Shown: one piece after another, positions 4,026-46,550 of the stretch | How the letters are laid out: each line of letters starts with the position of its first letter | Position numbering within the stretch: the first letter of the stretch is position 1 | Virus record (IMG/VR): IMGVR_UViG_3300044625_001067 | Coordinates: 124,001-188,000 of that record | DNA: 64,000 nt | Strand: one strand, 5' to 3' | Program-made: the position numbers and the translations under genes | Notes under the pieces: generated by a model | Told to the model about the DNA's origin: nothing | Database searches by the model: none | The model's input: only the letters and a program-made list of their open reading frames with translations

Positions 4026-4090
4026 ATTATACCGTTTCTGCGCCGCAGAAACAAGGGTGGAAACCGTCGGTTTAGGTTCGGTAAACCGCC
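4026..4090 (-). promoter_or_regulatory. repeated promoter cassette
   Basis: Two dyads 22 bp apart, TTGTTT-17-TATAAT, spacer dyad TTTCTGC-GGC-GCAGAAA. Confidence 0.85.
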
Positions 4091-4119
4091 CACTTTAGTG
4101 TAACCTTGCGACAGGGACC

Positions 4120-4359
4120 TCAGTCGTACTCGGCCAAAGTCACCTCCGGCTCATTTTGTACACCGTAGAAAACATTACCTTTTACAACTTCCCTGTGTGC
4201 TTCAAACTCCCATACGCTTACACTCTTCCCCTCATCGCCATCTATTTTACAGATAAGGGGTACCTCTAACGCTTTGTCCACAGCGTCTTCTTTGTCCACA
4301 GCGTCCACAATCATTATGACGCTCATTGTACAGGGGAGAATGACTTCGAACTTAGGCAT
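4120..4359 (-). CDS. hypothetical protein
   Basis: MPKFEVILPC..., ATG at 4359. Confidence 0.65.
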   Translation of the reverse strand: MPKFEVILPCTMSVIMIVDAVDKEDAVDKALEVPLICKIDGDEGKSVSVWEFEAHREVVKGNVFYGVQNEPEVTLAEYD

Positions 4360-4430
4360 GGTTTGACTTAGGTTGATAAGGGATGTGAGTTTAGGTTGCC
4401 CAGCGACACTATCACAGGTGGGTCCGCAAG

Positions 4431-4727
4431 TCAAGGTAAAACAGTGGCCCGGTACATCCAAGACGCGGAGTAATGCTGCAACTCAGCCAACTTGCTGAAC
4501 ATATCCTCCCGGTCAAGTTGGGCTTGCTTCCAGGCACCCTCTGAGTGAAAGTCCCGGGCGTCGCAAGTGGCGGCTGCCAGAGCCTCGCAGGCCCGGTTAA
4601 GCGCCTGGTGTGCAGCCTGGTACTCGTCGGCTAGCTCTCTAGCTCCAGTGCCGGAGCCTTCTGAGTGGGCCGTGGGCAGTTCATAAGGCTCTACGTATCT
4701 TTCTGCGGGAATAGAGTAGCGTGACAA
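4431..4727 (-). CDS. hypothetical protein
   Basis: 3' part of ORF 4431..4829; TTG start at 4727 is a guess that avoids overlap. Confidence 0.55.
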   Translation of the reverse strand: MSRYSIPAERYVEPYELPTAHSEGSGTGARELADEYQAAHQALNRACEALAAATCDARDFHSEGAWKQAQLDREDMFSKLAELQHYSASWMYRATVLP

Positions 4728-4750
4728 TTCACTTAGCAGGGTGGGGTGGT

Positions 4751-4948
4751 TTAGGGTCCAATACGCCGAGCAGGAACCACACGTAAACACTCTGGAGCGA
4801 CTACTCCGGCGGCAGCAAGCTCGTAGCAAGCTGACTCCGCGTCTCCTTCAGTGTGCCAGCGGTTGTCTCCTTCAGTGGCGCCATGGCCCAGGAAGCTGGG
4901 GTCGTCGGTCCATCCGAGAGTCTTAGACAAAGTTTCGATTTTAAACAT
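4751..4948 (-). CDS. hypothetical protein
   Basis: 65 aa ORF, ATG start, fits the packing. Confidence 0.65.
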   Translation of the reverse strand: MFKIETLSKTLGWTDDPSFLGHGATEGDNRWHTEGDAESACYELAAAGVVAPECLRVVPARRIGP

Positions 4949-4959
4949 GGGTCACGTAG

Positions 4960-5178
4960 TTAGGATTTAAGACACCAGTCGAACCTGCTAAACCTGTCAA
5001 TTTCGGCAGGGAAGTCATGTATTCCCCTCATTCTCGTAGCGTGTTTCCTTATGAAATCAGGGCAAACACGCGGATAGTCGGCTACCACCTTTTCAACTGC
5101 GGCTGTCCCATGATAGTCTAACCAAGACTGACTTTCTTTTAGTAGTCTAGTCCTTGTTTTCTCAGAAATCGGTACCAT
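4960..5178 (-). CDS. hypothetical protein
   Basis: 72 aa ORF, fits the packing. Confidence 0.6.
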   Translation of the reverse strand: MVPISEKTRTRLLKESQSWLDYHGTAAVEKVVADYPRVCPDFIRKHATRMRGIHDFPAEIDRFSRFDWCLKS

Positions 5179-5202
5179 GCGCCAATGCAGTGAGTTGGGG
5201 GC

Positions 5203-5418
5203 TCAGGTAGCTTTGCTACGCTTCAGCTGCTGTAACAAAATGTAGTGATTACCGCTGTTGGGCTTGCAATCTGAGTTGCCCATACAGAAGTCGAAGGCTT
5301 CGCAAAGCCGTCGAACTTCTGCGTCTGTCAGAAGTAGTCGGTGCAGCTTGGCGTCTGGAATCGGAAGAGTACCGTTGGTAAGGGTGCTGGCCAGACTGTT
5401 TCGCTTGTCTTTTGACAT
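5203..5418 (-). CDS. hypothetical protein
   Basis: ATG 5418 (MSKDKRNSL) lies just downstream of promoter cassette 5441..5505. Confidence 0.65.
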   Translation of the reverse strand: MSKDKRNSLASTLTNGTLPIPDAKLHRLLLTDAEVRRLCEAFDFCMGNSDCKPNSGNHYILLQQLKRSKAT

Positions 5419-5440
5419 GGAGGTTCCTTTCAACTCCTTT

Positions 5441-5505
5441 ATTATACCGTTTCTCCCCCGCAGAAACAAGGGGGGAAACCGTCAGTGTAGGTACGGTAAA
5501 CCGCC
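5441..5505 (-). promoter_or_regulatory. repeated promoter cassette
   Basis: Two dyads 22 bp apart, TTGTTT-17-TATAAT. Confidence 0.85.
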
Positions 5506-5524
5506 CCATTGGGCCGATTACAGC

Positions 5525-5944
5525 CTAAAACCCAAACTTCTTGATGGCTTCTCTTTCTTCGACTGTCAATTTGGCTAACGCACTACGGTGGGCGGCACGG
5601 TCTTTTCGTCTGGTCTCGTTAGCTTGCGTCCCCCTTTCAACACGAGAAGTCCATTCCTCGTCTGTTTCAGGACGATCACGAAAGTACCTTGTCTCAGCAC
5701 TACTTCGTGCTTCACCGTACTCGTCGAGATTAGCCGAGACAAAAGTATATATGTTGTCGAACCCCTTTTCTTTCACTCGCGTAAGGTAATCAACCACTTC
5801 TGCTATGCTCCCGGAAAAGATTTGGTCCGGGTAATCAGTGTGTATCCCGCGATAGGATGAATTCCATGTTGAAGAAAGAGGGGATTCTAACATCCACTCC
5901 CGAACGGTGTGGCGGGGATGAAATCTTGGGTTTGGGGTTTCCAC
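5525..5944 (-). CDS. hypothetical protein
   Basis: 139 aa ORF. Confidence 0.7.
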   Translation of the reverse strand: METPNPRFHPRHTVREWMLESPLSSTWNSSYRGIHTDYPDQIFSGSIAEVVDYLTRVKEKGFDNIYTFVSANLDEYGEARSSAETRYFRDRPETDEEWTSRVERGTQANETRRKDRAAHRSALAKLTVEEREAIKKFGF

Positions 5945-6009
5945 GTTGTTAATCGGTTTTAGTTTAAGGGTAGCTTTTACGGGCTACCCCGGAAGCCTTA
6001 AGCGTCGTG

Positions 6010-6462
6010 TCAGATGCAAGTTTGAGAGAGGATGTCAAGATTGGCATCGACCCACTCTTTCCCGTTGCTGTACACCTCGTCTTTAACCCCAATCGCAATA
6101 TAGTCAGGGTGGTACACTTTCGTGTCACCTTCAAGGGTCTCAAGGGTGATCTCGAAGCCGGGGGGCACGGCTACTATTTTGGCCAGAGCCTTGCGGCGAT
6201 ACACTCCCACTCCCGAGTTCGGCACAGTCTCTTCCCAGCTATCTGCAAAGATGTCAATCTTGCAAGGGTAGGGGTGGGACCCGTCTAAAGGTTCGAGTAC
6301 GTAATCGACCCCTTGAACCGCTGTCAAGTCTCCGTAAGACAAAGAGAAGACTTCTTCTCCAACCGCTTCACGTTTTTTCACCAAAGTCTTTCGACGGGCA
6401 AGGATCGGGGCACCGAACTGAGCTTCAACTTGGGCACCGGTTGAGAAAGTTAGTCGTTTCAC
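6010..6462 (-). CDS. hypothetical protein (PGDYG-like family, tentative)
   Basis: 150 aa ORF containing GDLTAVQGVDYVLEP...YPCKIDIF. Confidence 0.7.
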   Translation of the reverse strand: MKRLTFSTGAQVEAQFGAPILARRKTLVKKREAVGEEVFSLSYGDLTAVQGVDYVLEPLDGSHPYPCKIDIFADSWEETVPNSGVGVYRRKALAKIVAVPPGFEITLETLEGDTKVYHPDYIAIGVKDEVYSNGKEWVDANLDILSQTCI

Positions 6463-6509
6463 TGTTGTTTAAGTGTGAGGAGATGAATTGGCGTGCCCCC
6501 GAAGGGGAA

Positions 6510-6582
6510 AGTTCCAGGTCGGATTCGAACCGACGATACGGGCTTTGCAGGCCCGCGCCTTAGGCCGCTTGGCGACTGGAAC
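6510..6582 (-). tRNA. trnC: tRNA-Cys (GCA)
   Basis: GTTCCAG/CTGGAAC, loop CT-GCA-AA, U73 discriminator. Confidence 0.95.
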
Positions 6583-6709
6583 ATTAAACCCTGTTTAAGG
6601 GTGCCCAAGGGGGGAGTAAACTATTTAGAGCCGGACGGTGTTGAAGCATTCTGTACCAATCTAAGACGTGTTCGAGAGATAAGTTTCCAAAGGTGACACA
6701 TCAAAGACC

Positions 6710-7015
6710 TCAGTGGCTGGGGGATGATAACCCACAAACAGTACTTCCCGAAGGTATCGGCCTTGGTTTCTGCTCACGGGTTTGCCATTTCTTTTCGAGG
6801 AACTCAGTATCCCGCTGAATAATTTCGTTAAGCCTTTCGTAAAATCGTTCTAACTTTTGATCGACCTCTTCTCTGTCTAACGTCCGTGGCATACTGTAGC
6901 GACCCTTTTCTAGTGCGACTAATGCGTCACGAACTAAAGTTTTGAGAGATCCCACTTGACTCCCAAGATGATACATCTCGTCTCGCTGCTGGACCAGGGA
7001 ATTAATGTTTGCCAT
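6710..7015 (-). CDS. hypothetical coiled-coil protein
   Basis: 101 aa ORF. Confidence 0.7.
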   Translation of the reverse strand: MANINSLVQQRDEMYHLGSQVGSLKTLVRDALVALEKGRYSMPRTLDREEVDQKLERFYERLNEIIQRDTEFLEKKWQTREQKPRPIPSGSTVCGLSSPSH

Positions 7016-7046
7016 GACTTTGTAAGCGAAGGAACTTGGATTGAGA

Positions 7047-7283
7047 TCAGTTAAGCAATAATTGTTCTATTTGACCAAGGATGGACTCTGTATAACCGGC
7101 AATGAAGCCGTAGGCTTGCCTGGGGTCGGTTTCCCCCCGGACCCCTACACAACCGCATTCTGCGCAGTAGTGCTTTTTACGGGGCTTTTTAGGCCCGTCA
7201 GTTTGACCGGACAGAGCCTTGGACCGGGCTTCCTTCTCCGACTGAATGAGTCGGAGGATTTGTTGCTTGGTGGTGTCTTCCAT
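7047..7283 (-). CDS. hypothetical protein with CxxC
   Basis: 78 aa ORF directly after promoter cassette 7290..7354. Confidence 0.7.
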   Translation of the reverse strand: MEDTTKQQILRLIQSEKEARSKALSGQTDGPKKPRKKHYCAECGCVGVRGETDPRQAYGFIAGYTESILGQIEQLLLN

Positions 7284-7289
7284 GCACTT

Positions 7290-7354
7290 ACTATACCGTT
7301 TCTGCGGGGCAGAACCAAGCCGGGAAACCGGCCAAGGAAAGGCGGTTAACCGCC
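7290..7354 (-). promoter_or_regulatory. repeated promoter cassette
   Basis: Distal dyad is the perfect palindrome GGCGGTTAACCGCC (7341-7354); TTGGTT-17-TATAGT. Confidence 0.85.
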
Positions 7355-7409
7355 TTCAACCGAACGGGAACTTACAAACTCTTTTAGCTTCTGCAGGACT
7401 CCTATGGCG

Positions 7410-7775
7410 TTAAATCTGTGAAAAGACCAGGGCCAAGTAAGTGAGTTGGTGAAGAAGCTGGTCAATGCCGATGAGAACCCAGAACTCCTTGTTGGTGGGT
7501 GAGAGCCTTAGGGTTCGAGCGAGATTTTGCTTTAACCAGTCAATGTGATAGTGTAGCACACCATCAATCAACCCTAAGAGGATGGACTCGGTGGGAAAGA
7601 AGGGTAGGAACACGAGCATTGTTGCAAGTGCATGCTTCGCCGAGTGCTGTATTCCAACAGGATGGAGGTAGGTGCCCTTGTGCTTCACCTCGTCGTCTGT
7701 TTGCAACAACCAGTCCACAACAAAGTGCTTGACAAGGAGCAAAGTCACAAGGAGCAAGACTCGTGAGGAATCCAT
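7410..7775 (-). CDS. DUF3307-like membrane protein
   Basis: KHFVVDWLLQT...HSAKHALAT...LHYHIDWLK...IGIDQLLHQL motifs; ATG at 7775 chosen. Confidence 0.8.
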   Translation of the reverse strand: MDSSRVLLLVTLLLVKHFVVDWLLQTDDEVKHKGTYLHPVGIQHSAKHALATMLVFLPFFPTESILLGLIDGVLHYHIDWLKQNLARTLRLSPTNKEFWVLIGIDQLLHQLTYLALVFSQI

Positions 7776-7798
7776 ACAAATACTCGCACTCAAAGATA

Positions 7799-7869
7799 AG
7801 CCCCCAGCGAGAGTTGAACTCGCGTCTCCTCCTTACCAAAGAGGTACTCTGCCACTGAGCTATGGGGGC
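7799..7869 (-). tRNA. trnT: tRNA-Thr (GGT)
   Basis: GCCCCCA/TGGGGGC, loop TT-GGT-AA. Confidence 0.93.
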
Positions 7870-7984
7870 GTTCACCAGGAAGAACCTGGAAACCGGCACG
7901 GTAGCTACATACCTGAGATGCGAAGGCGCATTGCCAGATTTCCACATTGTGAAAACTTTGCCCTTCCTCCAGATTCAGAGCAAA

Positions 7985-8056
7985 TGGGAGATACTGGGAT
8001 CGAACCAGTGACGGCCTGTTTGTAGGACAGGTGCTCTACCGCTGAGCTAATCTCCC
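7985..8056 (-). tRNA. trnV: tRNA-Val (TAC), atypical C33
   Basis: GGGAGAT/ATCTCCC, loop CC-TAC-AA. Confidence 0.9.
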
Positions 8057-8087
8057 GATAAGGGGCAACTTTAATTGCCCGCGTATT

Positions 8088-8282
8088 TCAGTCCAGGAGG
8101 ACAAAAACGGAGTTTTGTATCACGTCCGACCCAAAGAAGACAGGACCGTCCTCCGTATCAAAATTGAAGTACTCAAGATCCTTCAGCTTAGTAGTTAACA
8201 TCTGGGTGAGTTCTTTCCTTTGGTTTAGGTGAAGATCCACATACACGAAGACCCCCATAGGGGTGATTGCTCTGATTTTCAT
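8088..8282 (-). CDS. hypothetical protein
   Basis: 64 aa ORF. Confidence 0.65.
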   Translation of the reverse strand: MKIRAITPMGVFVYVDLHLNQRKELTQMLTTKLKDLEYFNFDTEDGPVFFGSDVIQNSVFVLLD

Positions 8283-8297
8283 CGTTGGCTCTAGGGT

Positions 8298-8537
8298 TCA
8301 GGGGGCGAGTCGAAGGTAGTTAACTACCAGCTCAATAAAGAAGTCGTCGGTGTGCCCGTTCCCATGAATCTGAACAAACTCACGAAGCCGGTTCCGAATC
8401 TCACTGTGAGTTACAGTACCGTTGTCGAGAAGGTCAATTAGCTGTCCAGAAATGGACACGCAAAGCTCGTTCTCTTCACGAGCACTGAGGCACCGAATGC
8501 TGCCGAAGGAAGTTTCAGGCATTGGAGAGGAGTTCAT
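8298..8537 (-). CDS. hypothetical protein, paralog of 14840..15064
   Basis: Shared LSAR.E.ELCVSI.G.L..LL...TH.EI...HGNGH.DDFF. Confidence 0.8.
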   Translation of the reverse strand: MNSSPMPETSFGSIRCLSAREENELCVSISGQLIDLLDNGTVTHSEIRNRLREFVQIHGNGHTDDFFIELVVNYLRLAP

Positions 8538-8724: not shown

Positions 8725-8747
8725 GGTGCTTTGGTTTCAGCCTAACT

Positions 8748-8812
8748 ACTATAGCGTGTCTGCGGCGCAGAAACAAGGGTGGAAACCGTCCGGGTTGGGG
8801 CGGTAACCCCTG
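8748..8812 (-). promoter_or_regulatory. repeated promoter cassette
   Basis: Two dyads 22 bp apart, TTGTTT-17-TATAGT. Confidence 0.85.
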
Positions 8813-8831
8813 CTATCCAAAGGTTAGGGCC

Positions 8832-9395: not shown

Positions 9396-9439
9396 TTTAG
9401 AGTACCGTGGTTTACGGGGGGTTTGCGCTAGCAAAACAA

Positions 9440-9522
9440 TGGGTGTGGTAAGGATTCGAACCTACGTGTGCATAACAAACCGGGTTACAGCCGGTTCCCT
9501 TCGACCGCTCGGGCACACACCC
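9440..9522 (-). tRNA. trnY: tRNA-Tyr (GTA)
   Basis: GGGTGTG/CACACCC, loop CT-GTA-AC, long variable arm. Confidence 0.93.
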
Positions 9523-11258: not shown

Positions 11259-11333
11259 AATGTTTAAATTTTCAAGTTGCCCCGGAAAACCGGGTCGGGG
11301 GGTGAGAAACAAAGCTCTCTCAACCACTCCTTT

Positions 11334-11378
11334 AGTATAACCGGTTTCGCCGTGGGGCGAAAGGGCGGTTTACCGTCC
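11334..11378 (-). promoter_or_regulatory. promoter cassette heading a tRNA operon
   Basis: Dyad GGCGGTTTACCGTC, TTTCGC-17-TATACT, followed by conserved leader GGTGGTTG...GGCAACTTGAAAATTT. Confidence 0.85.
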
Positions 11379-11564: not shown

Positions 11565-11587
11565 GAGTTTGTTCCGGCTACAGTGCA

Positions 11588-11636
11588 ATCATAGCGCCTT
11601 TCCACCGAAGAGTAAAGGGCGGGTGACCGAACCGCC
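11588..11636 (-). promoter_or_regulatory. repeated promoter cassette
   Basis: TTTACT-17-TATGAT with an adjacent degenerate dyad. Confidence 0.7.
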
Positions 11637-14709: not shown

Positions 14710-14792
14710 CCGTATTAAATTTTCAAGTTGCCTTTTGCTTTCGCAAAAGCGGGGAGGAGGTGAAGGCGAAGCCCTCTCTCAACCACCCCTTT

Positions 14793-14836
14793 AGTATAAC
14801 CGGTTTCGCCGAAAGGTGAAAGGGCGGGAAACCGCC
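14793..14836 (-). promoter_or_regulatory. promoter cassette heading a tRNA operon
   Basis: Dyad GGCGGGAAACCGCC, TTTCAC-17-TATACT, conserved leader. Confidence 0.85.
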
Positions 14837-15064: not shown

Positions 15065-15095
15065 TTTGACTTGGAGGACCAACGGTAACAATTTA

Positions 15096-15161
15096 AGTTT
15101 AGCTGGTTTCACCGTGAAGCGAAAGGGTGGGAAACCGCCCCGGTTCGTTCGGTTAACTGAG
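15096..15161 (-). promoter_or_regulatory. repeated promoter cassette
   Basis: TTTCGC-17-TAAACT with dyads upstream. Confidence 0.7.
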
Positions 15162-16640: not shown

Positions 16641-16715
16641 TTGGTACTAAATTGTCAAGTTGCCCCCCGGAAACCGGGTCAGTAAGGAAAGCGGAAGCTT
16701 TCCAACCACCCCTTT

Positions 16716-16759
16716 AGTATAACCGGTTTTGCCGTAGGGCGAAAGGGCGGTTTACCGCC
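16716..16759 (-). promoter_or_regulatory. promoter cassette heading a tRNA operon
   Basis: Dyad GGCGGTTTACCGCC, TTTCGC-17-TATACT, conserved leader. Confidence 0.85.
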
Positions 16760-17458: not shown

Positions 17459-17533
17459 ATGGTGTTAAATTGTCAAGTTGCCTCCCGCAAGAGCGGAAGC
17501 GAGGCGGAAGCCGAGCTTCCCAACCACCCCTTT

Positions 17534-17576
17534 ACTATAGCGTTTTTCACCGGGCAAGTAAAGCGGGGAAACCGCC
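17534..17576 (-). promoter_or_regulatory. promoter cassette heading a tRNA operon
   Basis: TTTACT-17-TATAGT, dyad, conserved leader. Confidence 0.85.
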
Positions 17577-18040: not shown

Positions 18041-18065
18041 GGCGTTGACGGGTTTGACTGTGGTA

Positions 18066-18109
18066 ACTATAGCGGTTTTCACAGGGGAAGTAAAGCCGGG
18101 AAACCGCCC
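18066..18109 (-). promoter_or_regulatory. repeated promoter cassette
   Basis: TTTACT-17-TATAGT, dyad GCCGGGAAACCGCC. Confidence 0.85.
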
Positions 18110-18713: not shown

Positions 18714-18739
18714 TGTGAGCTGGTGATACTTGCCTTTAA

Positions 18740-18783
18740 AGTATACCGTGTCTGCCGAGCAGGAACAAGGGCGGGAAACCGCC
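18740..18783 (-). promoter_or_regulatory. repeated promoter cassette
   Basis: TTGTTC-17-TATACT, dyad GGCGGGAAACCGCC. Confidence 0.85.
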
Positions 18784-19476: not shown

Positions 19477-19514
19477 GTCCTTTTCCCTGAGGGGCGGTGT
19501 TGCCCTGTGTGTAT

Positions 19515-19579
19515 ATTATAGCGTTTCTGCCGAGCAAACCAAGCTGGAAAACCGCCTTATGGGGGTAGGGTTTACCGCC
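19515..19579 (-). promoter_or_regulatory. repeated promoter cassette (last minus-strand copy)
   Basis: TATAAT, TTGGTT (16-bp spacing), two dyads. Confidence 0.75.
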
Positions 19580-19904: not shown

Positions 19905-19969
19905 AACGGTTAACCCCCACCCTAGGGCGGTTTACCCCCCTTTGTTCTGCTCCACAGAAACGGTATAGT
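19905..19969 (+). promoter_or_regulatory. repeated promoter cassette (first plus-strand copy)
   Basis: Two dyads 21 bp apart, TTTGTT-17-TATAGT. Confidence 0.8.
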
Positions 19970-19993
19970 TAAAGGGTCAATCAGACAACGAAA

Positions 19994-20560: not shown

Positions 20561-20626
20561 GACGGTTAACCGAACCTTTCGAGGACGGTTTCCCCGCTTG
20601 CCTTTTCAACCGTAAGACGCTATAGT
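20561..20626 (+). promoter_or_regulatory. repeated promoter cassette
   Basis: Two dyads 23 bp apart, TTGCCT-17-TATAGT. Confidence 0.85.
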
Positions 20627-20632
20627 AGGTGT

Positions 20633-21238
20633 ATGGAACTAAAATCAACCCTTTCTGAGTCGTTCTTTCACCGGTTCTGCCCAGATCCCACGGTGATGTA
20701 CGATCTTGGAGAGATTTACGCAGAATTTAACGCCCGCTACTTCACTGGGAACTTACCACTTCTTCCTTGTAAGATTCGGACAGACGAAAACGGAGAAACT
20801 TGGTCGCGATACGACACCCTAAAGTGGGATGGTCGCATGGGTCGCAGAATTCTTGGCACATACAAAACGTCTGCACGACGTGGGTTCGGAACAATTCGCC
20901 TCTCTCGCGTAATTGCAGGTGACCCTGTAAAAACACGAAGCGTCCTCCTGCACGAGATGCTTCACAAGTATCTTGATCTTGAGCGCCGAGACGACGGTAT
21001 TAAGGGTCACGGTGAAAATTTCGTATCCGAAGCAAAGAGAATCAACGAACTTTGTGAAAGCACCAGAGTTAAGCACCGCATTCAATTCTACGACGAAGAG
21101 ATCACACAAGATCAACCGTTCGTCATACCCGAGCTTTTGGATGACAAAGTTAATTGTAGCAAAGATCTAGACATTGCTCGAAACATGCAGTCTGTGATGA
21201 GGGCCGCGTTCTCACAAAAATTCGAGTACTTTCAGTGA
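20633..21238 (+). CDS. SprT-like zinc metalloprotease domain protein
   Basis: FNARYF...IRLS...VLLHEMLH...GHGENF SprT pattern. Confidence 0.8.
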   Translation: MELKSTLSESFFHRFCPDPTVMYDLGEIYAEFNARYFTGNLPLLPCKIRTDENGETWSRYDTLKWDGRMGRRILGTYKTSARRGFGTIRLSRVIAGDPVKTRSVLLHEMLHKYLDLERRDDGIKGHGENFVSEAKRINELCESTRVKHRIQFYDEEITQDQPFVIPELLDDKVNCSKDLDIARNMQSVMRAAFSQKFEYFQ

Positions 21239-23617: not shown

Positions 23618-25101
23618 TCCGAGAGGTAATATCAAAAGAGTTACAGTCAAGGGTCGAACCCTTACAGATTGATAGGGGTGCTCTTGAAAACTGCCCTCGC
23701 AGTGAATATATTGGACAATTCCCTAAGGCGACAGACTATGACCGCGTAATCGATGAAGACTGTGATGTTTACGTCTCAGGTGTAAAAGTCTTGTCCTTCA
23801 GGAAAGCTCTTTTCCCACTTCTTTCCGAGGGTTCTTCCAAACAGAAGGAGACTTGGGACTTTTTCCGAGCAGCTTCAAAAGAAGTTTACGGCACCCAAAG
23901 AGGTGTCGTTGCGGGCACAGAGTTTACAACTCGCCCCGAATCACGCTTAACCAAAGGACAGGTTGCCTTTTTCGCTAGTGCTTCAGTGGGCTTGATCACA
24001 ACGCTCGCTCAAGCGCGAGAAACCCTAGAAAGTTCGGATGAGCTCACCAGCAAGACTCTGAAAATCAAATACGTGAAGAAAGACTACCCCGAACTTGCGG
24101 AGAAAATGAAACCGTTAGAGGCGGAAATTCGCACACTGAACTCCGGAGACCCGAAACCAGAAAGTCTGAGAAACCAGAGAAGAGAACAGCTTTGGGGTTG
24201 GTTCGAACCTTGGTTACTAGAAGTTTGGCTGCCCTCAGAAAACAAAGTAGAAGAAGTTAAAAAAGTTCTAAACACTTACATAAGTTCCCAGTTGAACTTT
24301 AACCACTGCTACAGTAACGTCCTTGGGGCGATTGACCGTGGGGCTAGATTTCCCTACGGTCGTTTAAGCGGAACCACTCAGAGATACTATGAGCAGTTCT
24401 CAAAATACAGAGACATTTATTACACAGCCTGCGAAGGTTTCAGGTACAATTTTCCGGAGACTTGGGTCAAAGTCAAGGAAGTGATTTCGAGGGCTAAAGA
24501 CCCTAACTACAACTTGTTCGGCACTGCCTTTACGAGTGTAACCGTAAATTTCAATTTCAAGACTGCCTACCACGTTGACAAGAACAATTTGAAAGGGGGT
24601 ATGTCCGTCTTAACTGCTTTTACAAAAGGTGTTTATGAAGGTCACTACTTAGTGTTTCCCGAAGTGAGATTGGCCTTCAATTTAAGAGACGGGGACTTCA
24701 TCGTAGGGGATACTCAAACTTTGCTCCATGGTAACAGCCCCATGACAAAACTTACTGAAGATGCTGAGCGGGTTTCTCTGGTTTTCTACTCACGAGAGAA
24801 CATGAACCGATTGGACGATCTTGAGTGCGAAGAATGCCGAAAACAGTTCATGAAGTTTTCACTTCAGTCTCTGAAAGAACGGGGCAAAGATCATAAAGAT
24901 TGGAGAGGTGTTTGGCAAGGTATGTGGACTTCTCAAGAATGGCTAGACTTTAGAAAAGAAAGAAACTTGGAACACTGTTCAAACTCTAATTGGCAGCTTT
25001 CCTCGCCGTACGAGAACGAAGTTACGAAAGAGGTGAAGTTGTTCAAGGATGATCCAGGCGAAGGGTGGAAACTCGTACAAGTGTTTACACAAGATCGGTA
25101 A
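23614..25101 (+). CDS. 2OG-Fe(II) dioxygenase, TET/JBP family (copy 2)
   Basis: [33 protein letters not shown]; collinear with copy 1 along its length. Confidence 0.85.
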
Positions 25102-25157
25102 ACCGCCCTGAAGCCTTCGGCTTCCCCCTTGTTTCTGCTTCGCATAAATGCTATGAT
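25094..25157 (+). promoter_or_regulatory. repeated promoter cassette
   Basis: TTGTTT-17-TATGAT; distal dyad ATCGGTAAACCGCC. Confidence 0.75.
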
Positions 25158-25162
25158 TGTTT

Positions 25163-25760
25163 TATGGAAATCTACTTCAGCACAGACGTTGAGACCGACG
25201 GACCGATCCCCGGACCTAACAGCATGCTTTCGCTCGGGTCGGCTGCGTTTTCCCCTGAAGGAAAACTCCTAAGCACCTTCTCGGTGAACCTAGAGACCCT
25301 CCCCGGAGCCGAACCGGACCCCACTACCCAAGCGTGGTGGGAGTCTCACCCGGAGGCCTACAGAGCCTCTCGGGAGCATACCCGGAGTCCGGACCAAGCC
25401 ATGTTGCTCTTCTCGGGTTGGGTTGGCCAGACCGTGAAAGCTAACAGTAACCAAGATTCAGGTGGCCGGAAAGCCTTGCCCGTATTCGTGGGTTTTCCTG
25501 CAGGGTTTGACTTTCTTTTCGTGTATTGGTACCTTATTCGGTTCACTGGACAGTCCCCATTTAGCTTCTCGGCGATTGACGGTAAGACCTATGCTATGGC
25601 CTTGCTCAAAAGAGGATACCGGGAGTCCACAAAACGAAACTACCCAAAGGAGTGGTTTCCCATCGAAAACAAGCATACTCACATCGCTGTAGAGGATGCC
25701 ATTGAACAAGGTCGTATTTTCTGCAATATGCTTCGATCCAATCTTAACATCCTACCTTAG
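25163..25760 (+). CDS. DEDDh-type 3'-5' exonuclease
   Basis: [22 protein letters not shown] motifs; ATG 25163 after promoter. Confidence 0.85.
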
Positions 25761-27636: not shown

Positions 27637-27679
27637 GGCGGTTTTCCGCCCTTTACTGTAAGCTCCTCTCCCCTATGTT
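27637..27679 (+). promoter_or_regulatory. repeated promoter cassette
   Basis: Dyad GGCGGTTTTCCGCC, TTTACT-16-TATGTT. Confidence 0.65.
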
Positions 27680-27700
27680 TAGAACAGCTTCCGGCTACCA

Positions 27701-30137: not shown

Positions 30138-30205
30138 GGCGGTTTCCCGGTTGCTCTGGGGGCGGTTTACCCTCCTTTGTTTCTGCAGCGCAGAAACGGT
30201 ATACT
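30138..30205 (+). promoter_or_regulatory. repeated promoter cassette
   Basis: Two dyads, TTGTTT-17-TATACT, spacer dyad TTTCTGC-AGC-GCAGAAA. Confidence 0.88.
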
Positions 30206-30229
30206 AAGTACGTTGAAAGCAAATTTCCA

Positions 30230-30614: not shown

Positions 30615-30679
30615 GGCGGTTTCCCGTTCACCCTGGGGCGGTTTCCCGGCTTGTCTCTGCGGAGCAGAAACGGTATACT
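30615..30679 (+). promoter_or_regulatory. repeated promoter cassette
   Basis: Two dyads 22 bp apart, TTGTCT-17-TATACT. Confidence 0.88.
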
Positions 30680-30712
30680 TAGTGTAACTCCCGAGTCAAG
30701 TACCCAACAACA

Positions 30713-31577: not shown

Positions 31578-31937
31578 ATGACCGGCACCACCTTTAACTA
31601 TCCACCCCATTTACCCGACTTCGATGACATGGACCCGGACGGTGCCATTGAAGTTTTGTTAGGGGAAGACGAGGACGGGTACCAACATACTCGTTTCGAG
31701 AGCGTGGCCTACTACCGGAACACAGGAAAGACCCACCCTTGGCGTCACACCAAAGACTGGGCTCCTCGCTCAAACTACACCGAGGAGGACTTTACCTGGG
31801 CTTTGTCGAGAATTTTGAACACAGTTACCTGTTCTCGTGACCTTCGTAGCAAGGGCCTTGGGCTCACCGACGACGAATGCCGACGCATATACTCAATGCG
31901 GGACCGGGCTAGGGAGGTAGCGAAGCACGATGGGTGA
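31578..31937 (+). CDS. hypothetical protein
   Basis: 119 aa ORF. Confidence 0.7.
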   Translation: MTGTTFNYPPHLPDFDDMDPDGAIEVLLGEDEDGYQHTRFESVAYYRNTGKTHPWRHTKDWAPRSNYTEEDFTWALSRILNTVTCSRDLRSKGLGLTDDECRRIYSMRDRAREVAKHDG

Positions 31938-31993
31938 CCGGTTGCTCCGGGGCGGTTTCCCGCCTTGTTTTCTCGAAGAGAAAACGCTATAGT
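31929..31993 (+). promoter_or_regulatory. repeated promoter cassette
   Basis: Dyad GGCGGTTTCCCGCC, TTGTTT-17-TATAGT, spacer dyad TTTTCTC-GAA-GAGAAAA. Confidence 0.88.
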
Positions 31994-32023
31994 AGTTACA
32001 AGACAAACGCTCCCGAGAAAGAC

Positions 32024-34424: not shown

Positions 34425-34829
34425 ATGGATCACTCAGCACCTTTTGACCCGAGAACTGTTGCGGAAAGAATCCGAGACAACAATGCTGTTCTGCAATCGG
34501 TAGCTGAAAGCTATACTCTCGTGTCAAAAGCAGACTTGTACGACACAGAGCAAGCTACAGCTTTCCTTGAGATTGACTCCGACGAAAGTGTAAGTAACTG
34601 GCTTGAAGGCGGGTACTTTCCCGGTGCTTTTCAGTCTGATGGGAGGTGGTTGTTCCCACTCGCGTCACTCATCAAGGTGAGGGAGCGGTTAGATGAACTT
34701 CAGTACAATAACAAACATCGGCTTCTAACCCTTGAAACTGAACCCGAGGACTACTGCAAAGTTTGCGGTGGAATCCCTGTCTTCCTGCCGAATAAGTTGG
34801 GGGTCCTAGCTAGAAACACAACAATTTAA
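34425..34829 (+). CDS. HTH_17/excisionase-like DNA-binding protein
   Basis: YDTEQATAFLEI...VSNWLEGGYFPGA...GRWLFP. Confidence 0.65.
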   Translation: MDHSAPFDPRTVAERIRDNNAVLQSVAESYTLVSKADLYDTEQATAFLEIDSDESVSNWLEGGYFPGAFQSDGRWLFPLASLIKVRERLDELQYNNKHRLLTLETEPEDYCKVCGGIPVFLPNKLGVLARNTTI

Positions 34830-38430: not shown

Positions 38431-38495
38431 TACGGTTGACCGTTTACTTCGAGACGGTTTCCCGCCTTTACTTCCCTGGTGAAAACCGGCATACT
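38431..38495 (+). promoter_or_regulatory. repeated promoter cassette
   Basis: Two dyads 22 bp apart, TTTACT-17-CATACT. Confidence 0.8.
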
Positions 38496-38531
38496 TAGTG
38501 AAAGATGGCCTAACACGTGGGGGGCGAAGCA

Positions 38532-41348: not shown

Positions 41349-41582
41349 ATGACTAAGCACAAACTCAGCCCTGAAGCCGAAGCCGCATGGAACGCCTACT
41401 GCGATGTTGCAGACCGAATCGGAGTTTTTGAAGACACCGGGGAAGCACTAGCTGCTTTTCTTCGAGAACTGATAACGCAGATTGAATTTCGAGGTGAACT
41501 CGGACTTACACCGCTTGGCGCACACGGGCACTACCAAGAGAAGTTGTACGCGATTGCAACTGAGTTGGATGGGTACGGTTAA
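41349..41582 (+). CDS. hypothetical protein
   Basis: LSPEAEAAWNAY...LAAFLRE...IATELDG; similar to 40050..40292. Confidence 0.7.
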   Translation: MTKHKLSPEAEAAWNAYCDVADRIGVFEDTGEALAAFLRELITQIEFRGELGLTPLGAHGHYQEKLYAIATELDGYG

Positions 41583-41638
41583 CCGCTTGCTCTGGGGCGG
41601 TTTCCCGGCTAGGTTTCTCGAAGGGAAACCGGTATAGT
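41574..41638 (+). promoter_or_regulatory. repeated promoter cassette
   Basis: Two dyads 22 bp apart, TAGGTT-17-TATAGT. Confidence 0.8.
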
Positions 41639-41674
41639 TGCCTTATACGTACTCGCGCAGACTCAACTTTTAAC

Positions 41675-44461: not shown

Positions 44462-44471
44462 CTGGGGTTAA

Positions 44472-44669
44472 ATGAAAGGGGAAAGTGCCACTTGGCAGTG
44501 GGGTGACGAGCTACAAGAACGAAAGCTACCGTCTCCTGAGGAACAAGCCTTAGCTGACGCCGAGCACTCACTGCGAATGGTAGCGGCAGGCCTACAGCTA
44601 GAAAAAGCGGATAACCGCCCTGAGCGGGGCGGTTTAGGCCCTTGCTTTAACGCGACAAACACGCTATAA
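44472..44669 (+). CDS. hypothetical protein
   Basis: 65 aa ORF; the 3' end runs through a promoter cassette. Confidence 0.45.
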   Translation: MKGESATWQWGDELQERKLPSPEEQALADAEHSLRMVAAGLQLEKADNRPERGGLGPCFNATNTL

Positions 44670-44670
44670 T
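44606..44670 (+). promoter_or_regulatory. repeated promoter cassette
   Basis: Two dyads 22 bp apart, TTGCTT-17-TATAAT. Confidence 0.8.
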
Positions 44671-44692
44671 AGTTTTTGTTTGGGGAACCACT

Positions 44693-45328
44693 GTGAAAAT
44701 CAGATTCATCGGTGATGTTCATTGCAAATGGTCGAAGTATGAGAAGCTAATTAGAGAATGCAACCGCTCTCTTCAAGTCGGGGACTTCGGTGTGGGTTTC
44801 ATCGACCCGAAGACCGAGAAGCCATACAGCAGCCCACCCTACGACGCGATGTCAAAAGGCGAGCACTTTTTCGTACGAGGAAACCACGACAGTCCCGGTG
44901 CCTGCAAAAGACACCCTTACTGGGTGAAAGACGGGGGCTCGATGTTCGGGCGCGACGACATTTTTTGTGTGGGTGGAGCTTACTCCATCGATAGGGACCG
45001 ACGCACAGAGCGCTACGACTGGTGGCCTGACGAAGAGCTTTCTTACGGCGAGCTTTGCAACATTACGGACGCGTATGAGCTTGTGAAGCCGAAGGTTGTC
45101 GTCACGCATGAGTGCCCGGACTCTGTAATTTCTCTGGTTTGTCACAAAGTGGGGATGCACAAATTTGACATCCCTTCGGTAACACGAAGGTGTTTTGACA
45201 ACATGCTCGAGATTCATAAACCGGACCTTTGGATTCATGGCCACTGGCATCTAAATCACCATACGGTGTACAAAGGTGTGGAATTTATTGGTCTTGGTGA
45301 GCTATCCTTCCTCGACATGGACGTTTAA
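44693..45328 (+). CDS. calcineurin-like metallophosphoesterase
   Basis: IGDVH, VGDFG, RGNHD, VTHECP, HGHWH. Confidence 0.9.
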   Translation: MKIRFIGDVHCKWSKYEKLIRECNRSLQVGDFGVGFIDPKTEKPYSSPPYDAMSKGEHFFVRGNHDSPGACKRHPYWVKDGGSMFGRDDIFCVGGAYSIDRDRRTERYDWWPDEELSYGELCNITDAYELVKPKVVVTHECPDSVISLVCHKVGMHKFDIPSVTRRCFDNMLEIHKPDLWIHGHWHLNHHTVYKGVEFIGLGELSFLDMDV

Positions 45329-45456
45329 TCAAGCCCCCACTCATAGGGAACGTCGTACGAAGGTCAATTACAAGGAATCTACACCGCTATACTAAGTTTG
45401 TGGCCCCCCCTTCTTTCTACCTATAAGCCTTAAATCAAAACCACCATTAAAGCAAA

Positions 45457-46026
45457 ATGACAACAGTAATTAACCTCTTCGGCGGGTCCGGTTGCGGAAA
45501 ATCAACCACAGCTGCGCTCCTCTTCGCCAGAATGAAGCTGGCCGGCATTCACGTTGAACTTGTAAGAGAGTATGTGAAGTACTGGGCGTGGAACGACCGC
45601 AAAGTGCGTGAGTGGGACCAACTCTACCTCCTCGGTAAGCAAAGCGCCTACGAGAGCATGCTGTACGGCAAAGTTGACTACATTGTTACCGACAGCCCTA
45701 TACTTCTGGCAGGAATCTACCAAGACTACCGGTCTCAAGGCAAAGACACGTACGTAAGTTCCGCCGCTCAATCCTTCATGGCTCACGCAGAGGAAAGGGG
45801 TGTAACGTACAAGAATTTCTTCCTAAATCGCATCAAGCCCTTCGACCCTCGCGGACGTTACGAAACCGAAGACCAAGCCAAAAGAGTTGACGAGTTTGTC
45901 TACGACTATCTGTGCAAGTACAGTGGGTTCCGTCCAATCTCAATATCTGGACCGGACGAACGCAGGGACACAGAGATTTTGAGCTATCTTGGTGAGCTAC
46001 ATTTTAAGGAGGCTCCCTCGCTGTGA
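45457..46026 (+). CDS. P-loop nucleotide kinase (NadR/AAA_28-like)
   Basis: NLFGGSGCGKST, VTDSPILL, GRYETE. Confidence 0.85.
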   Translation: MTTVINLFGGSGCGKSTTAALLFARMKLAGIHVELVREYVKYWAWNDRKVREWDQLYLLGKQSAYESMLYGKVDYIVTDSPILLAGIYQDYRSQGKDTYVSSAAQSFMAHAEERGVTYKNFFLNRIKPFDPRGRYETEDQAKRVDEFVYDYLCKYSGFRPISISGPDERRDTEILSYLGELHFKEAPSL

Positions 46027-46208
46027 CACTAACTTTCCGAGAACTTTTAGAAAGTTTGCAGACTTTTGCTAACGATGACCTGGACAAGGACGCTACTGTG
46101 GAGGTAGACGGGGAATTTTTTGGAGTGTCGCACTTTGGAGTGTCCACCTGTTTGGATGACACACCGCTTGATGAAGGGCACCCCTTTCTTTCAACTGCAA
46201 CAAGGTAA
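46023..46208 (+). CDS. hypothetical protein
   Basis: 61 aa ORF, GTGA coupling. Confidence 0.6.
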   Translation: MTLTFRELLESLQTFANDDLDKDATVEVDGEFFGVSHFGVSTCLDDTPLDEGHPFLSTATR

Positions 46209-46221
46209 AGTGTTGCCTTAG

Positions 46222-46264
46222 GATGGTTCCCCGGCTTGCTTTGCTGGGGCAAAACAGCTATAAT
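46222..46264 (+). promoter_or_regulatory. repeated promoter cassette
   Basis: TTGCTT-17-TATAAT with a degenerate dyad. Confidence 0.75.
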
Positions 46265-46287
46265 ACGCTCATAAATCCTGAAAACCA

Positions 46288-46464
46288 ATGTCATACAACC
46301 CGGACTCAGATACCTACCCCTTCAACGACAGCGAGACTCTGTTAAACTTCCTGGACCGTCTTCTACTGGAGTCCGTGTCGTGCGAAGGAGGCCTTGTGCC
46401 CCTCACTTCTTCTCGGTTTCAACGCCTTTCCAGGCTTGTTGAAGGTGTCTCAATTGACGATTGA
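46288..46464 (+). CDS. small hypothetical protein (58 aa)
   Basis: Manual translation MSYNPDSDTYPF...; after promoter. Confidence 0.55.
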   Translation: MSYNPDSDTYPFNDSETLLNFLDRLLLESVSCEGGLVPLTSSRFQRLSRLVEGVSIDD

Positions 46465-46486
46465 CCTTGACCCCCGTTGGGCGGTG

Positions 46487-46550
46487 AGCGGTTAGCCCCC
46501 TTGCCTTGGGCGGTTTCCCCGTTTGTTTTCCAGAAGGAAAACGCTATAGT
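46487..46550 (+). promoter_or_regulatory. repeated promoter cassette (last copy in window)
   Basis: Two dyads 22 bp apart, TTGTTT-16-TATAGT. Confidence 0.82.

What the first reader, a model, noticed from the sequence alone, without database searches (positions are those of the whole stretch)
4026..46550. About 25-copy promoter cassette with paired 14-bp dyads spaced two helical turns: a phage-wide regulon
I count 13 minus-strand and 12 plus-strand copies, always oriented with the downstream genes. The layout is [dyad]-8 bp-[dyad]-(-35: TTGYYT or TTTMCY)-17 bp-(-10: TATAVT). The dyad consensus is GGCGG-WWWM-CCGCC (perfect GGCGGTTAACCGCC at 7341), and centre-to-centre spacing is 22 bp in most double copies (21-23 in a few). 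The proximal dyad abuts the -35, like a class II activator site. None occurs after 46.55 kb among replication and structural genes. I do not recognise the dyad as a known cyanobacterial site (not NtcA, LexA or HLR1). Candidate binders encoded here are the XRE protein 46575..46841, which follows the last copy, the HTH 34425..34829 and the RHH proteins.
Basis: partly seen in the sequence, partly recalled or inferred. Interest (0 to 1): 0.66.

Follow-up and report, generated by a model that had tools for sequence, protein, structure and literature searches.

The report
Cyanophage-wide early promoter cassette family
A 277-kb lake cyanophage drives nearly all its non-structural genes from about 95 copies of one 50-70 bp promoter, which combines a normal bacterial -10 box with conserved GC-rich protein-binding sites and a self-complementary spacer; the promoter role is well supported, but what binds it is unknown.

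Summary
I find 24 strong copies and one weak copy in the window (13 minus, 12 plus). All point the same way as their genes, and shuffled sequence gives none. The window is part of a 277-kb virus record with about 95 copies. They cover the early two-thirds of the genome and are absent from the structural block.

Each copy has a TATAnT -10 box with G two bases upstream and a weak -35 (TTG or TTTAC) 17 bp away. A purine sits 7 nt after the -10. A start codon lies exactly there (leaderless) or 14-27 nt further on. A CGG-N4-CC element abuts the -35. In 35 of 95 copies a true CGG-N4-CCG palindrome lies 22 bp upstream.

The dyad arms outside the CGG/CCG core do not co-vary, so these look like protein sites, not hairpins.

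Relatives carry the cassette too, including the cultured Synechococcus phage S-CBWM1. Bacterial genomes hold it only at chance level. Structural genes use a different motif, GGGTAAAAC. Two phage sigma genes are present; one lies directly behind a cassette.

Best reading: early promoters for host RNA polymerase plus an unidentified dyad-binding factor. No transcription start could be mapped.

The parts
4019..4090 (-). Cassette with distal and proximal sites 22 bp apart, -35 TTGTTT, spacer repeat 8 of 8 pairs, -10 TATAAT at 4026-4031
5434..5505 (-). Cassette with double site, spacer repeat 7 of 8 pairs, -10 TATAAT; ATG 16 nt after the inferred start
7283..7354 (-). Cassette whose distal site is the perfect GGCGGTTAACCGCC at 7341-7354; the proximal site is GCCGG..CCGGC; leaderless ATG
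8741..8812 (-). Cassette with double site, spacer repeat 7 of 8 pairs, -10 TATAGT
11327..11377 (-). Class-B cassette (single dyad, -35 TTTCGC, -10 TATACT) placed 69 nt before tRNA-Leu
11581..11631 (-). Cassette with single site, -35 TTTACT, -10 TATGAT
14786..14836 (-). Class-B cassette with a perfect dyad at 14823-14836, placed 78 nt before tRNA-Lys
15089..15161 (-). Cassette with double site, -10 TAAACT
16709..16759 (-). Class-B cassette with a perfect dyad at 16746-16759, placed 70 nt before tRNA-Ile
17527..17576 (-). Cassette with single site, -35 TTTACT, placed 69 nt before tRNA-Lys
18059..18108 (-). Cassette with single site, -35 TTTACT, -10 TATAGT
18733..18783 (-). Cassette with a perfect dyad at 18770-18783, -10 TATACT
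19508..19579 (-). Last minus-strand cassette (sites 23 bp apart); it diverges from the next copy
19905..19976 (+). First plus-strand cassette (sites 21 bp apart), -10 TATAGT
20561..20633 (+). Cassette with double site and leaderless ATG at 20633
25094..25164 (+). Weak-scoring cassette with a degenerate proximal site, -10 TATGAT and a leaderless ATG
27637..27690 (+). Probable 25th copy: a perfect dyad at 27637-27650 and TTTACT but a poor -10 (TATGTT); below the matrix threshold; lies upstream of ORF 27701-28057
30138..30212 (+). Cassette with double site (23 bp apart), spacer repeat 8 of 8 pairs, -10 TATACT
30615..30686 (+). Highest-scoring window cassette, with double site
31929..32000 (+). 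Cassette with a perfect proximal dyad at 31951-31964 and spacer repeat TTTTCTC-GAA-GAGAAAA (8 of 8 pairs)
38431..38502 (+). Cassette with double site, -35 TTTACT, -10 CATACT
41574..41645 (+). Cassette with double site, spacer repeat 7 of 8 pairs
44606..44677 (+). Cassette with double site, -10 TATAAT
46220..46271 (+). Cassette with a degenerate upstream element, -10 TATAAT
46487..46557 (+). Last cassette, -10 at 46545-46550; it drives the XRE-like ORF and the genes ahead of the gyrase gene

Best explanation
Each copy is a composite early (or delayed-early) promoter read by the host's sigma-70-type RNA polymerase. The core is a near-consensus -10 box (TATAnT, with G two bases upstream, as in an extended -10) and a weak -35 (TTG or TTTAC) 17 bp away. 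Transcription is inferred to start at the purine 7 nt after the -10 box. That gives either leaderless mRNAs or leaders of 14-27 nt, or, in one sub-class, a leader of about 70 nt ahead of a tRNA gene. The element that abuts the -35 (core CGGTTTMCC, centred near -42.5) and the optional palindrome CGG-N4-CCG 22 bp upstream (near -64.5) are sequence-specific protein-binding sites on one face of the helix. They most likely recruit or stabilise polymerase at a promoter with a poor -35, as a class II plus upstream activator arrangement would. No early-type core promoter without a dyad was found. The factor would therefore have to be present at the start of infection: either host-encoded or delivered with the virion. 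A separate 8-bp inverted repeat with a 3-nt loop, centred near -24 in the spacer, is a second control element. It could be an operator for shut-off or a supercoil-sensitive structure. The phage has two sigma-factor genes, and one lies directly behind a cassette. The structural genes carry a different motif, GGGTAAAAC. Together these give a two-stage programme. Shown here: the anatomy, the statistics, the conservation and the positional coupling. Inferred: the start site, the polymerase, the sign of regulation and the binder.
For: There are 95-99 sites against 0 in shuffles, all co-oriented with their genes and filling the intergenic gaps. The upstream ORF usually ends 36-100 nt before the -10. 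Position +12 from the start of the -10 box is a purine in 89 of 95 copies. The distance from there to the start codon is bimodal: 0, or 14-27 with a peak at 17. In the relative G002, 25 of 33 copies have ATG exactly at that position. Dyad and core promoter are coupled. No core-promoter match lacks a dyad, and 62 of 67 near-perfect dyads lie inside cassettes. Spacing to the -10 varies by only +/-1 bp, and dyad-to-dyad spacing is 22 bp in three genomes. The dyad arms outside the CGG/CCG core show no co-variation (z from -2.8 to 1.7), and arm variants mix freely. The left half-site and the -10 box change least between orthologous copies of two strains: 3-5% against 9.5-11% in the linker and loop. 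The cassette is conserved in G001, G002, G003 and S-CBWM1, including the copy in front of a sigma gene. It occurs in 82 stretches from about 47 viral contigs, against 6 chance-level hits in 596 Gb of bacterial genomes. The late motif has the complementary distribution, and phage sigma genes are present.
Against: No transcription start has been measured. The metatranscriptome runs are held only as contigs and show neither starts nor strand. No binder was identified. The small phage proteins conserved in all four phages show no DNA-binding domain apart from the sigma factors. The host genome could not be searched for the site. Position alone cannot tell an activator from a repressor. In some copies the proximal dyad plus the T-rich -35 passes a simple terminator scan. 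The generic sigma-70 consensus scan picks up only one of the copies in 28-47 kb, because the -35 boxes are weak.
Confidence: 0.6

Rival explanations
1. PeSL-type composite terminator/promoter. On this reading the GC-rich dyads act as RNA stem-loops that terminate or attenuate transcription arriving from the upstream unit. The repeated cassettes also serve as recombination sites that shuffle small genes.
For: PeSLs of T4-like phages have the same general build: a GGGG..CCCC-type stem-loop next to a sigma-70-like early promoter, found between small orphan genes (PMC2839356, PMC4122927). Here several proximal dyads pass a terminator-like scan. S-CBWM1 dyads are perfect 6-bp GC stems. Between two strains about 95% identical, 8 of 64 early-region alignment breakpoints fall inside cassette footprints against 4.1% expected (P = 0.005). 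Three indels run from cassette to cassette.
Against: The hairpins are weak. Mean RNA folding energy is -7.2 kcal/mol in this genome and -2.9 in G002. Only 18 of 92 and 1 of 32 copies combine a hairpin of -8 or better with a T-rich tail. The arms do not co-vary. The right arm of the proximal element is degenerate while the left arm is fixed. A terminator would not need spacing to the -10 held within +/-1 bp. Most indel breakpoints are not at cassettes.
Confidence: 0.15
2. The dyads are operators for a phage-encoded repressor that switches off all early promoters together at the move to late transcription. The core promoter would need no help.
For: The -10 box is near consensus and has an extended -10-like G. 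A site directly upstream of and touching the -35 could block sigma region 4 or the alpha subunits. Every early promoter carries the site, as a global shut-off would require. The spacer inverted repeat lies where repressors usually bind.
Against: The -35 is weak in most copies: TTG only, which the generic scan misses. In S-CBWM1 the -10 is weak instead. Both suggest the core needs help. No conserved phage repressor was found. Fixed helical phasing of two sites upstream of -35 is more typical of activators; this last point rests on established knowledge of CRP, NtcA, Mor and C promoters and is an inference here.
Confidence: 0.15
3. The cassettes are middle promoters read by host core polymerase carrying one of the two phage sigma factors. 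The GC-rich element would then be part of that sigma's recognition sequence.
For: Two ORFs with sigma-70 region 2 are encoded, one of 204 aa and one of 242 aa. They are conserved in S-CBWM1. There are two motif classes and two sigmas.
Against: One sigma gene lies directly behind a cassette in this phage and in S-CBWM1, so that sigma could not make its own first transcript. TATAAT with TTG at 17 bp is the signature of a primary sigma. The distal site is a true palindrome, which does not fit recognition by a single sigma domain.
Confidence: 0.07
4. An N4-type hairpin promoter. The spacer inverted repeat would extrude as a DNA hairpin that a phage polymerase recognises directly.
For: The stem is 8 bp with a 3-nt loop and shows compensatory changes. 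Several loops are C-GAA-G, a very stable DNA mini-hairpin motif; this point comes from my own knowledge.
Against: There is no single-subunit polymerase match and no giant ORF; the largest is 1590 aa. About 45% of copies lack the repeat, and S-CBWM1 largely lacks it. The leaderless ATG sits 7 nt after the -10 box, not about 11 nt after the loop.
Confidence: 0.02

Closest known systems
PeSLs (promoter-early stem-loops) of T4-like phages (Arbiol et al. 2010, PMC2839356; Comeau et al. 2014, PMC4122927)
   Same: Both are dozens of near-identical intergenic cassettes that join a G/C-rich inverted repeat to a host-type early promoter. Both sit in front of small orphan genes in plastic early regions. 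Some strain-to-strain indels run from cassette to cassette.
   Different: In PeSLs the stem-loop is a tested terminator, followed by an AT-rich UP-like region. Here the repeat abuts the -35 at fixed spacing and is a weak hairpin whose arms do not co-vary. It often occurs twice, 22 bp apart, and there is no AT-rich tract. The spacer inverted repeat and the leaderless starts have no PeSL counterpart that I know of.
Activator-dependent phage promoters with a dyad touching the -35: Mu Pm/Mor and Mu late promoters/C; T4 middle promoters with MotA/AsiA (from my own knowledge)
   Same: A good -10 box, a poor -35, and a conserved protein site placed where it can replace or assist the -35 contact. The arrangement is used for a whole temporal class of phage genes.
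   Different: Those systems have a known phage-encoded activator made from earlier promoters, and they involve a handful to a few dozen promoters. Here no activator gene was found, no earlier promoter class was seen, and the site sequence (CGG-N4-CCG) differs.
Class II/class I bacterial promoters (CRP; cyanobacterial NtcA, GTA-N8-TAC at -41.5) (from my own knowledge)
   Same: A 14-bp dyad is centred one base from the canonical -41.5 position. A second site lies two helical turns upstream.
   Different: The half-sites are only 7 bp apart centre to centre, against 11 in the CRP family. The sequence matches none of the cyanobacterial sites I know (NtcA, LexA, HLR1, Pho box). The proximal site is asymmetric.
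Halovirus HF2 intergenic repeats that carry promoters (PMC8707807, seen)
   Same: Long conserved intergenic repeats (58 bp) spread through a viral genome and shown to be promoters.
   Different: That system is archaeal and uses AT-rich TATA/BRE-type promoters. No dyad pair or spacer palindrome was noted in what I saw of the abstract (only its opening lines).
Phage N4 early promoters (DNA hairpin with 5-7 bp stem and 3-nt loop) (from my own knowledge)
   Same: A short stem with a 3-nt loop inside a phage early promoter.
   Different: N4 uses a giant virion polymerase and has no -10/-35 boxes. Here the boxes are present and no such polymerase is encoded.

Membership tests
Sigma-70-type (primary sigma) bacterial promoter | -10 hexamer close to TATAAT | tested here: met
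   T at position 1 in 98%, A at position 2 in 100%, T at position 6 in 98% of 95 copies. G two bases upstream in 97%.
Sigma-70-type (primary sigma) bacterial promoter | -35 hexamer close to TTGACA, 17 +/- 1 bp upstream | tested here: inconclusive
   Only TTG (54 copies) or TTT/TTTAC (22 copies) is kept at 17 bp. The generic scan calls only one copy in 28-47 kb. S-CBWM1 has TTTACA.
Sigma-70-type (primary sigma) bacterial promoter | Transcription starts about 7 nt after the -10 box | not testable with these tools
   The support is indirect. There is a purine at that position in 89 of 95 copies. ATG sits exactly there in 25 of 33 G002 copies. The RNA runs are held as contigs only.
PeSL composite terminator/promoter cassette | Stable stem-loop that terminates upstream transcription | tested here: inconclusive
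   Mean folding energy is -7.2 kcal/mol (this genome) and -2.9 (G002). Terminator-like copies number 18 of 92 and 1 of 32. The arms do not co-vary. Termination itself was not assayed.
PeSL composite terminator/promoter cassette | [quoted passage not shown] | tested here: not met
   The dyad abuts the -35, and the columns between them are C-rich.
PeSL composite terminator/promoter cassette | Cassettes flank small orphan genes and bound indels between close strains | tested here: met
   Median cassette spacing is 1356 bp. Most of the 68 small window ORFs match no Pfam family. 8 of 64 breakpoints lie in cassettes, P = 0.005, and 3 indels run from cassette to cassette. The enrichment is modest.
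Class II activator-dependent promoter | Dyad centred near -41.5, overlapping or touching the -35 | tested here: met
   The 14-mer spans -49 to -36 relative to the inferred start, so its centre is at -42.5.
Class II activator-dependent promoter | An identified activator that binds the dyad and is needed for transcription | not testable with these tools
   No conserved phage DNA-binding protein was found. The host genome could not be searched.
Intrinsic terminator | G+C-rich hairpin followed directly by a U-run | tested here: not met
   The criterion is met by a minority only: 18 of 92 copies here and 1 of 32 in G002.
N4-type hairpin promoter | A phage-encoded virion RNA polymerase that reads the hairpin | tested here: not met
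   PF00940 gave no match, though this control-less search proves little. No ORF exceeds 1590 aa.

The most novel reading that the evidence does not exclude
The cassette may be a three-part promoter code of a kind not yet described. Part one is a primary-sigma core. Part two is a new CGG-N4-CCG recognition module, read by a still unknown host or virion-delivered factor that every early gene of a whole cyanophage clade depends on. Part three is a structure-forming spacer palindrome that gates about half of the promoters, for example through DNA supercoiling. Under this reading, timing and strength would be set by DNA shape as well as by proteins.
Probability: 0.15. Interest if true: 0.8.

Novelty: new variant of a known kind. 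Interest (0 to 1): 0.55.

Why it matters
Very little is known about how cyanophages outside the T4-like and T7-like groups control transcription. Here a single compact sequence explains the expression of about 170 kb of a 277-kb genome, and it splits the genome into early and late parts without any experiment. The cassette also occurs in a cultured phage-host pair, S-CBWM1 and Synechococcus CBW1002. The unknown dyad-binding factor, the leaderless starts and the spacer palindrome can therefore be tested directly. The cassette gives a sequence signature for recognising this phage clade and its early genes in lake metagenomes. It is also a compact, apparently strong promoter that could be tried as a tool in picocyanobacteria.

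Tried and rejected
1. RNA evidence. Six lake metatranscriptome runs hold the stretch, but they are stored as assembled contigs. Laying four of them on window 29000-34999 gave no starts, ends or strand. It showed only that assemblies break or join wrongly at cassette copies.
2. Host regulon test. I therefore could not ask whether picocyanobacterial genomes use CGG-N4-CCG at -42.5. The composite pattern itself is at chance level in bacterial genomes.
3. Rfam. Only tRNAs match in the window. No known RNA family covers the cassettes or the tRNA leaders.
4. Candidate binders. The XRE-like and HTH ORFs are weak Pfam matches and are not conserved across cassette-bearing phages. S-CBWM1 ORFs at the matching position have no DNA-binding domain. 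The S-CBWM1 ORFs annotated as 'DNA binding' or 'transcription elongation' are a pyrimidine-dimer glycosylase, a B116-like protein and a SprT-like protein.
5. RNA or single-strand polarity of the spacer repeat. G-T mismatches (38) and A-C mismatches (29) are about equal, so no strand is favoured.
6. N4-like and single-subunit polymerase ideas were rejected.
7. Literature. Searching the dyad strings, S-CBWM1 and cyanophage promoter terms found no description of this motif. The original S-CBWM1 paper is not held, so prior description there cannot be excluded.
8. The large protein searches, structure prediction and complex prediction were not used. No claim here rests on them.

Full report
**Where the window lies.** The window is bases 124001-188000 of a 277,244-bp IMG/VR virus record rated 98% complete. 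Window proteins include a Mu-type portal, a tail sheath, a family A DNA polymerase with a mitochondrial-type exonuclease domain, and a gyrase A-like protein. There are also two Tet/JBP dioxygenases and a DUF1517 protein. The closest named relative is Synechococcus phage S-CBWM1 (genus Aokuangvirus), with 61% portal identity. That phage carries psbA, hli, two sigma factors and tRNA arrays. The stretch occurs in many lake-water metagenomes. This is therefore an uncultivated jumbo freshwater cyanomyovirus.

- The strict dyad GGCGG-N4-CCGCC occurs 6 times in the window, against 0.05 expected.
- A weight matrix from the proximal dyad to the -10 box finds 95-99 sites in the genome and none in five Markov shuffles.
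- The window holds 24 of these: 13 on the minus strand and 11 on the plus strand. A weaker plus-strand copy lies at 27637.
- Sites follow the gene strand throughout: plus at 4-44 kb, minus at 50-143.5 kb, plus at 143.9-170.5 kb.
- None lies between 171 and 250 kb, where the structural genes sit. Three lie at 252-268 kb.

**Anatomy.** Positions are given relative to the first base of the -10 hexamer.
- The -10 box is T(98%) A(100%) T(88%) A(93%) n T(98%).
- G at -2 is present in 97% of copies, like the G of an extended -10.
- TT at -23/-22 is followed by G (63%) or T. This is a weak -35 with a 17-bp spacer.
- C-rich columns occupy -28 to -24.
- GGGCGGTTT occupies about -39 to -30.
- Position +12, the 7th base after the hexamer, is a purine in 89 of 95 copies.

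The distance from that purine to the first start codon of an ORF is bimodal. It is exactly 0 in about 20 copies, and 14-27 nt (peak 17) in about 45. In the relative G002, 25 of 33 copies have ATG exactly there. Chance would give 1 in 64. This is the strongest indirect evidence that transcription starts 7 nt after the hexamer and that many of these mRNAs are leaderless.

The same-strand upstream ORF usually ends 36-100 nt before the hexamer, so the cassette fills the intergenic gap. With the start set at +12, the proximal 14-mer spans -49 to -36 (centre -42.5) and the distal one is centred at -64.5.

**The two upstream elements.** The proximal CGG starts 34-36 bp before the hexamer.
- A perfect distal CGG-N4-CCG is present in 35 of 95 copies here, 26 of 33 in G002 and 7 of 20 in G001.
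- Its spacing from the proximal element is 22 bp in 59 of 68 cases.
- The distal centre is mostly TTAA or TAAA, so the distal site is a true palindrome.
- The proximal centre is TTTC or TTTA, oriented with transcription.
- The proximal right arm is CCG in only 49 of 92 copies here and 6 of 32 in G002.

The phrase 'paired dyads' therefore describes the best copies, not the family. The constant part is a forward CGGTT half-site next to the -35.

Outside the invariant CGG/CCG core, the arms pair no more often than column composition predicts (z from -2.8 to 1.7). Arm variants such as GGGCGG and GTTCGG combine freely with either right arm. As RNA the hairpins are weak: -7.2 kcal/mol here and -2.9 in G002. 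Few have a T-rich tail. These elements are conserved for their sequence, not for pairing, which points to a protein site.

Between this genome and a strain about 95% identical (G003), 33 orthologous cassettes can be compared. They changed at 3% of positions in the extended -10 box and 4.9% in the proximal dyad. The linker changed at 9.5% and the spacer loop at 11%.

The -35/-10 spacer holds an inverted repeat of 8 bp with a 3-nt loop, pairing -21..-14 with -10..-3. Typical versions are:
- TTTCTGC-nnn-GCAGAAA
- TTTTCGC-nnn-GCGAAAA
- TTTTCTC-GAA-GAGAAAA
- CTTTCC-nnnn-GGAAAG

Perfect stems of 5 bp or more occur in 40 copies, against 13 expected from column shuffles. I also ran the formal pair count on 77 copies from the window, G001 and G002:
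- 71.9% of cells pair, against 61.1 +/- 1.2 in shuffles.
- 79 cells have changes on both sides, against 39.5.
- The co-variation score is 0.333 against 0.190, and none of 500 shuffles reaches it.
- Structures slid by 1-3 columns score 0.09-0.20.

One caveat applies: related copies inflate such scores. G-T mismatches (38) and A-C mismatches (29) are about equal, so neither strand is favoured. The repeat goes with TTG-type -35 boxes (40 of 54) and is rare with TTT-type boxes (4 of 22; P = 2e-5). S-CBWM1 largely lacks it. The dyads thus behave like protein sites, while the spacer repeat behaves like a structure or a set of class-specific operators.

**Coupling and specificity.** At a threshold that keeps 80% of the known copies, no core-promoter match exists without a dyad. 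Of 67 dyads with at most one arm mismatch, 62 lie in cassettes. A composite pattern (14-mer, TT, 20-22 nt, TATAnT) hits 6 unrelated bacterial genomes in 596 Gb, about the number expected by chance. None of them is a cyanobacterium. The same pattern hits 82 stretches from about 47 IMG/VR contigs. S-CBWM1 has about 15 copies of a simpler version: a perfect GGGCGG-N4-CCGCCC, then TTTACA, a 17-bp spacer, and TAAGCT or TAAAGT. One of them sits directly before a sigma-factor gene. The same holds here, where the cassette at genome 252192 lies before the sigma ORF at 252206.

**The other promoter class.** Upstream of the structural genes a different motif recurs, GGGTAAAAC or GGGTAAAGT. GGGTAAAA occurs 30 times on the plus strand and 6 on the minus strand, almost all between 160 and 277 kb. 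In S-CBWM1 the counts are 33 plus and 1 minus. One phage sigma gene lies directly behind a cassette. Together these facts give a simple cascade: cassette promoters first, then phage sigma, then GGGTAAAAC promoters. The cascade is an inference from distribution, not from expression data.

**Mechanism.** The promoter assignment is well supported. For the dyads, four facts favour a factor that helps polymerase in a class II-like way: the fixed +/-1 bp spacing to the core, the two-turn phasing, the weak -35, and the presence of the site at every early promoter. A repressor for global shut-off cannot be excluded. Because I found no earlier promoter class, the factor should be host-encoded or brought in by the virion.

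No conserved phage DNA-binding protein turned up among the 68 ORFs shared by all four phages, apart from the sigma factors. No ribbon-helix-helix family matched any small window ORF, though such short domains are easily missed. A half-site separation of 7 bp would suit ribbon-helix-helix or AbrB-type binders better than classical helix-turn-helix dimers. That point rests on my own knowledge and is only a lead.

**Comparison with known systems.** The closest described kind is the PeSL of T4-like phages: a G/C-rich stem-loop plus an early promoter, repeated between orphan genes and mediating modular shuffling.
- Shared features: the cassette-like repetition, the orphan-gene context, and some cassette-to-cassette indels between strains. 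Of 64 breakpoints, 8 fall in cassette footprints against 4.1% expected (P = 0.005), with three clear events.
- Differences: here the hairpin is weak and does not co-vary, there is no AT-rich tract, the second site is phased, and the spacer carries a palindrome.

I therefore class the finding as a new variant of a known kind.

**Limits.** No transcription start, binder or regulatory sign has been measured. The original S-CBWM1 paper could not be read. Read laying was given 6,000 letters. No genetic code other than table 11 was used.

Noticed in passing
window 43640, 49405, 55347, 57320, 61738, 63277 (plus strand): A second conserved motif, GGGTAAAAC or GGGTAAAGT, lies 20-40 nt upstream of replication-adjacent and structural genes such as sheath and portal. 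Genome-wide it occurs 30 times on the plus strand and 6 on the minus strand, almost only at 160-277 kb. S-CBWM1 has 33 plus and 1 minus. It is probably the late promoter read by a phage sigma factor.
   Followed up: partly
window 11259-11327, 14709-14786, 16640-16709, 17459-17527 (minus strand): Four cassettes with a distinct spacer (class B) are followed by a conserved leader of 69-78 nt before a tRNA gene. The leader has GGTGGTTG, then two hairpins whose sequences differ but still pair, then GGCAACTTGAMAATTTAA. More copies lie at genome 40.5-44 kb and in G002. No Rfam family matches. It could be a processing signal or a small RNA.
   Followed up: partly
window 19642 (genome 143642) and genome 45600: The 98-kb block at genome 45.6-143.64 kb is inverted relative to the 95%-identical strain G003. 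In G001 and G002 all cassettes point one way. The breakpoint splits an ORF that is intact in G003. This is either a real inversion or a misassembly of this record. It explains why the window has minus-strand and plus-strand halves.
   Followed up: partly
window 660-17459 (minus strand): ARAGORN finds 34 tRNA genes in the window and 49 in the genome, covering most amino acids. One, at 14274-14363, scores as tRNA-Sec in Rfam but is called tRNA-Ser(tga) by ARAGORN.
   Followed up: no
window 21739-23226 and 23614-25101 (plus strand): Two paralogous 495-aa ORFs carry Tet/JBP dioxygenase domains. This suggests that the phage DNA carries oxidised or hypermodified bases. If so, modification of C in the CGG/CCG cores could affect how the cassette is recognised.
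   Followed up: no
window 30203 and 31944: Metatranscriptome contigs from two runs continue at these points into the flanks of a different cassette copy (genome about 4407). The repeated cassettes therefore cause chimeric joins in short-read assemblies, which is a caution for contigs of this clade.
   Followed up: partly
window 7283, 20633, 25164; genome-wide in G000 and G002: Leaderless ORFs often begin ATGGAAAAC or ATGAAA. The A-rich first codons may belong to the initial transcribed sequence or to a signal for leaderless translation, rather than reflecting related proteins. I did not test whether the proteins are paralogues.
   Followed up: no
G000:C1 about 196020-196050 (outside the window): A GC hairpin followed by a run of about 28 T lies just upstream of the ORF starting at genome 196065. 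It looks like a strong terminator, unlike anything at the cassettes.
   Followed up: no
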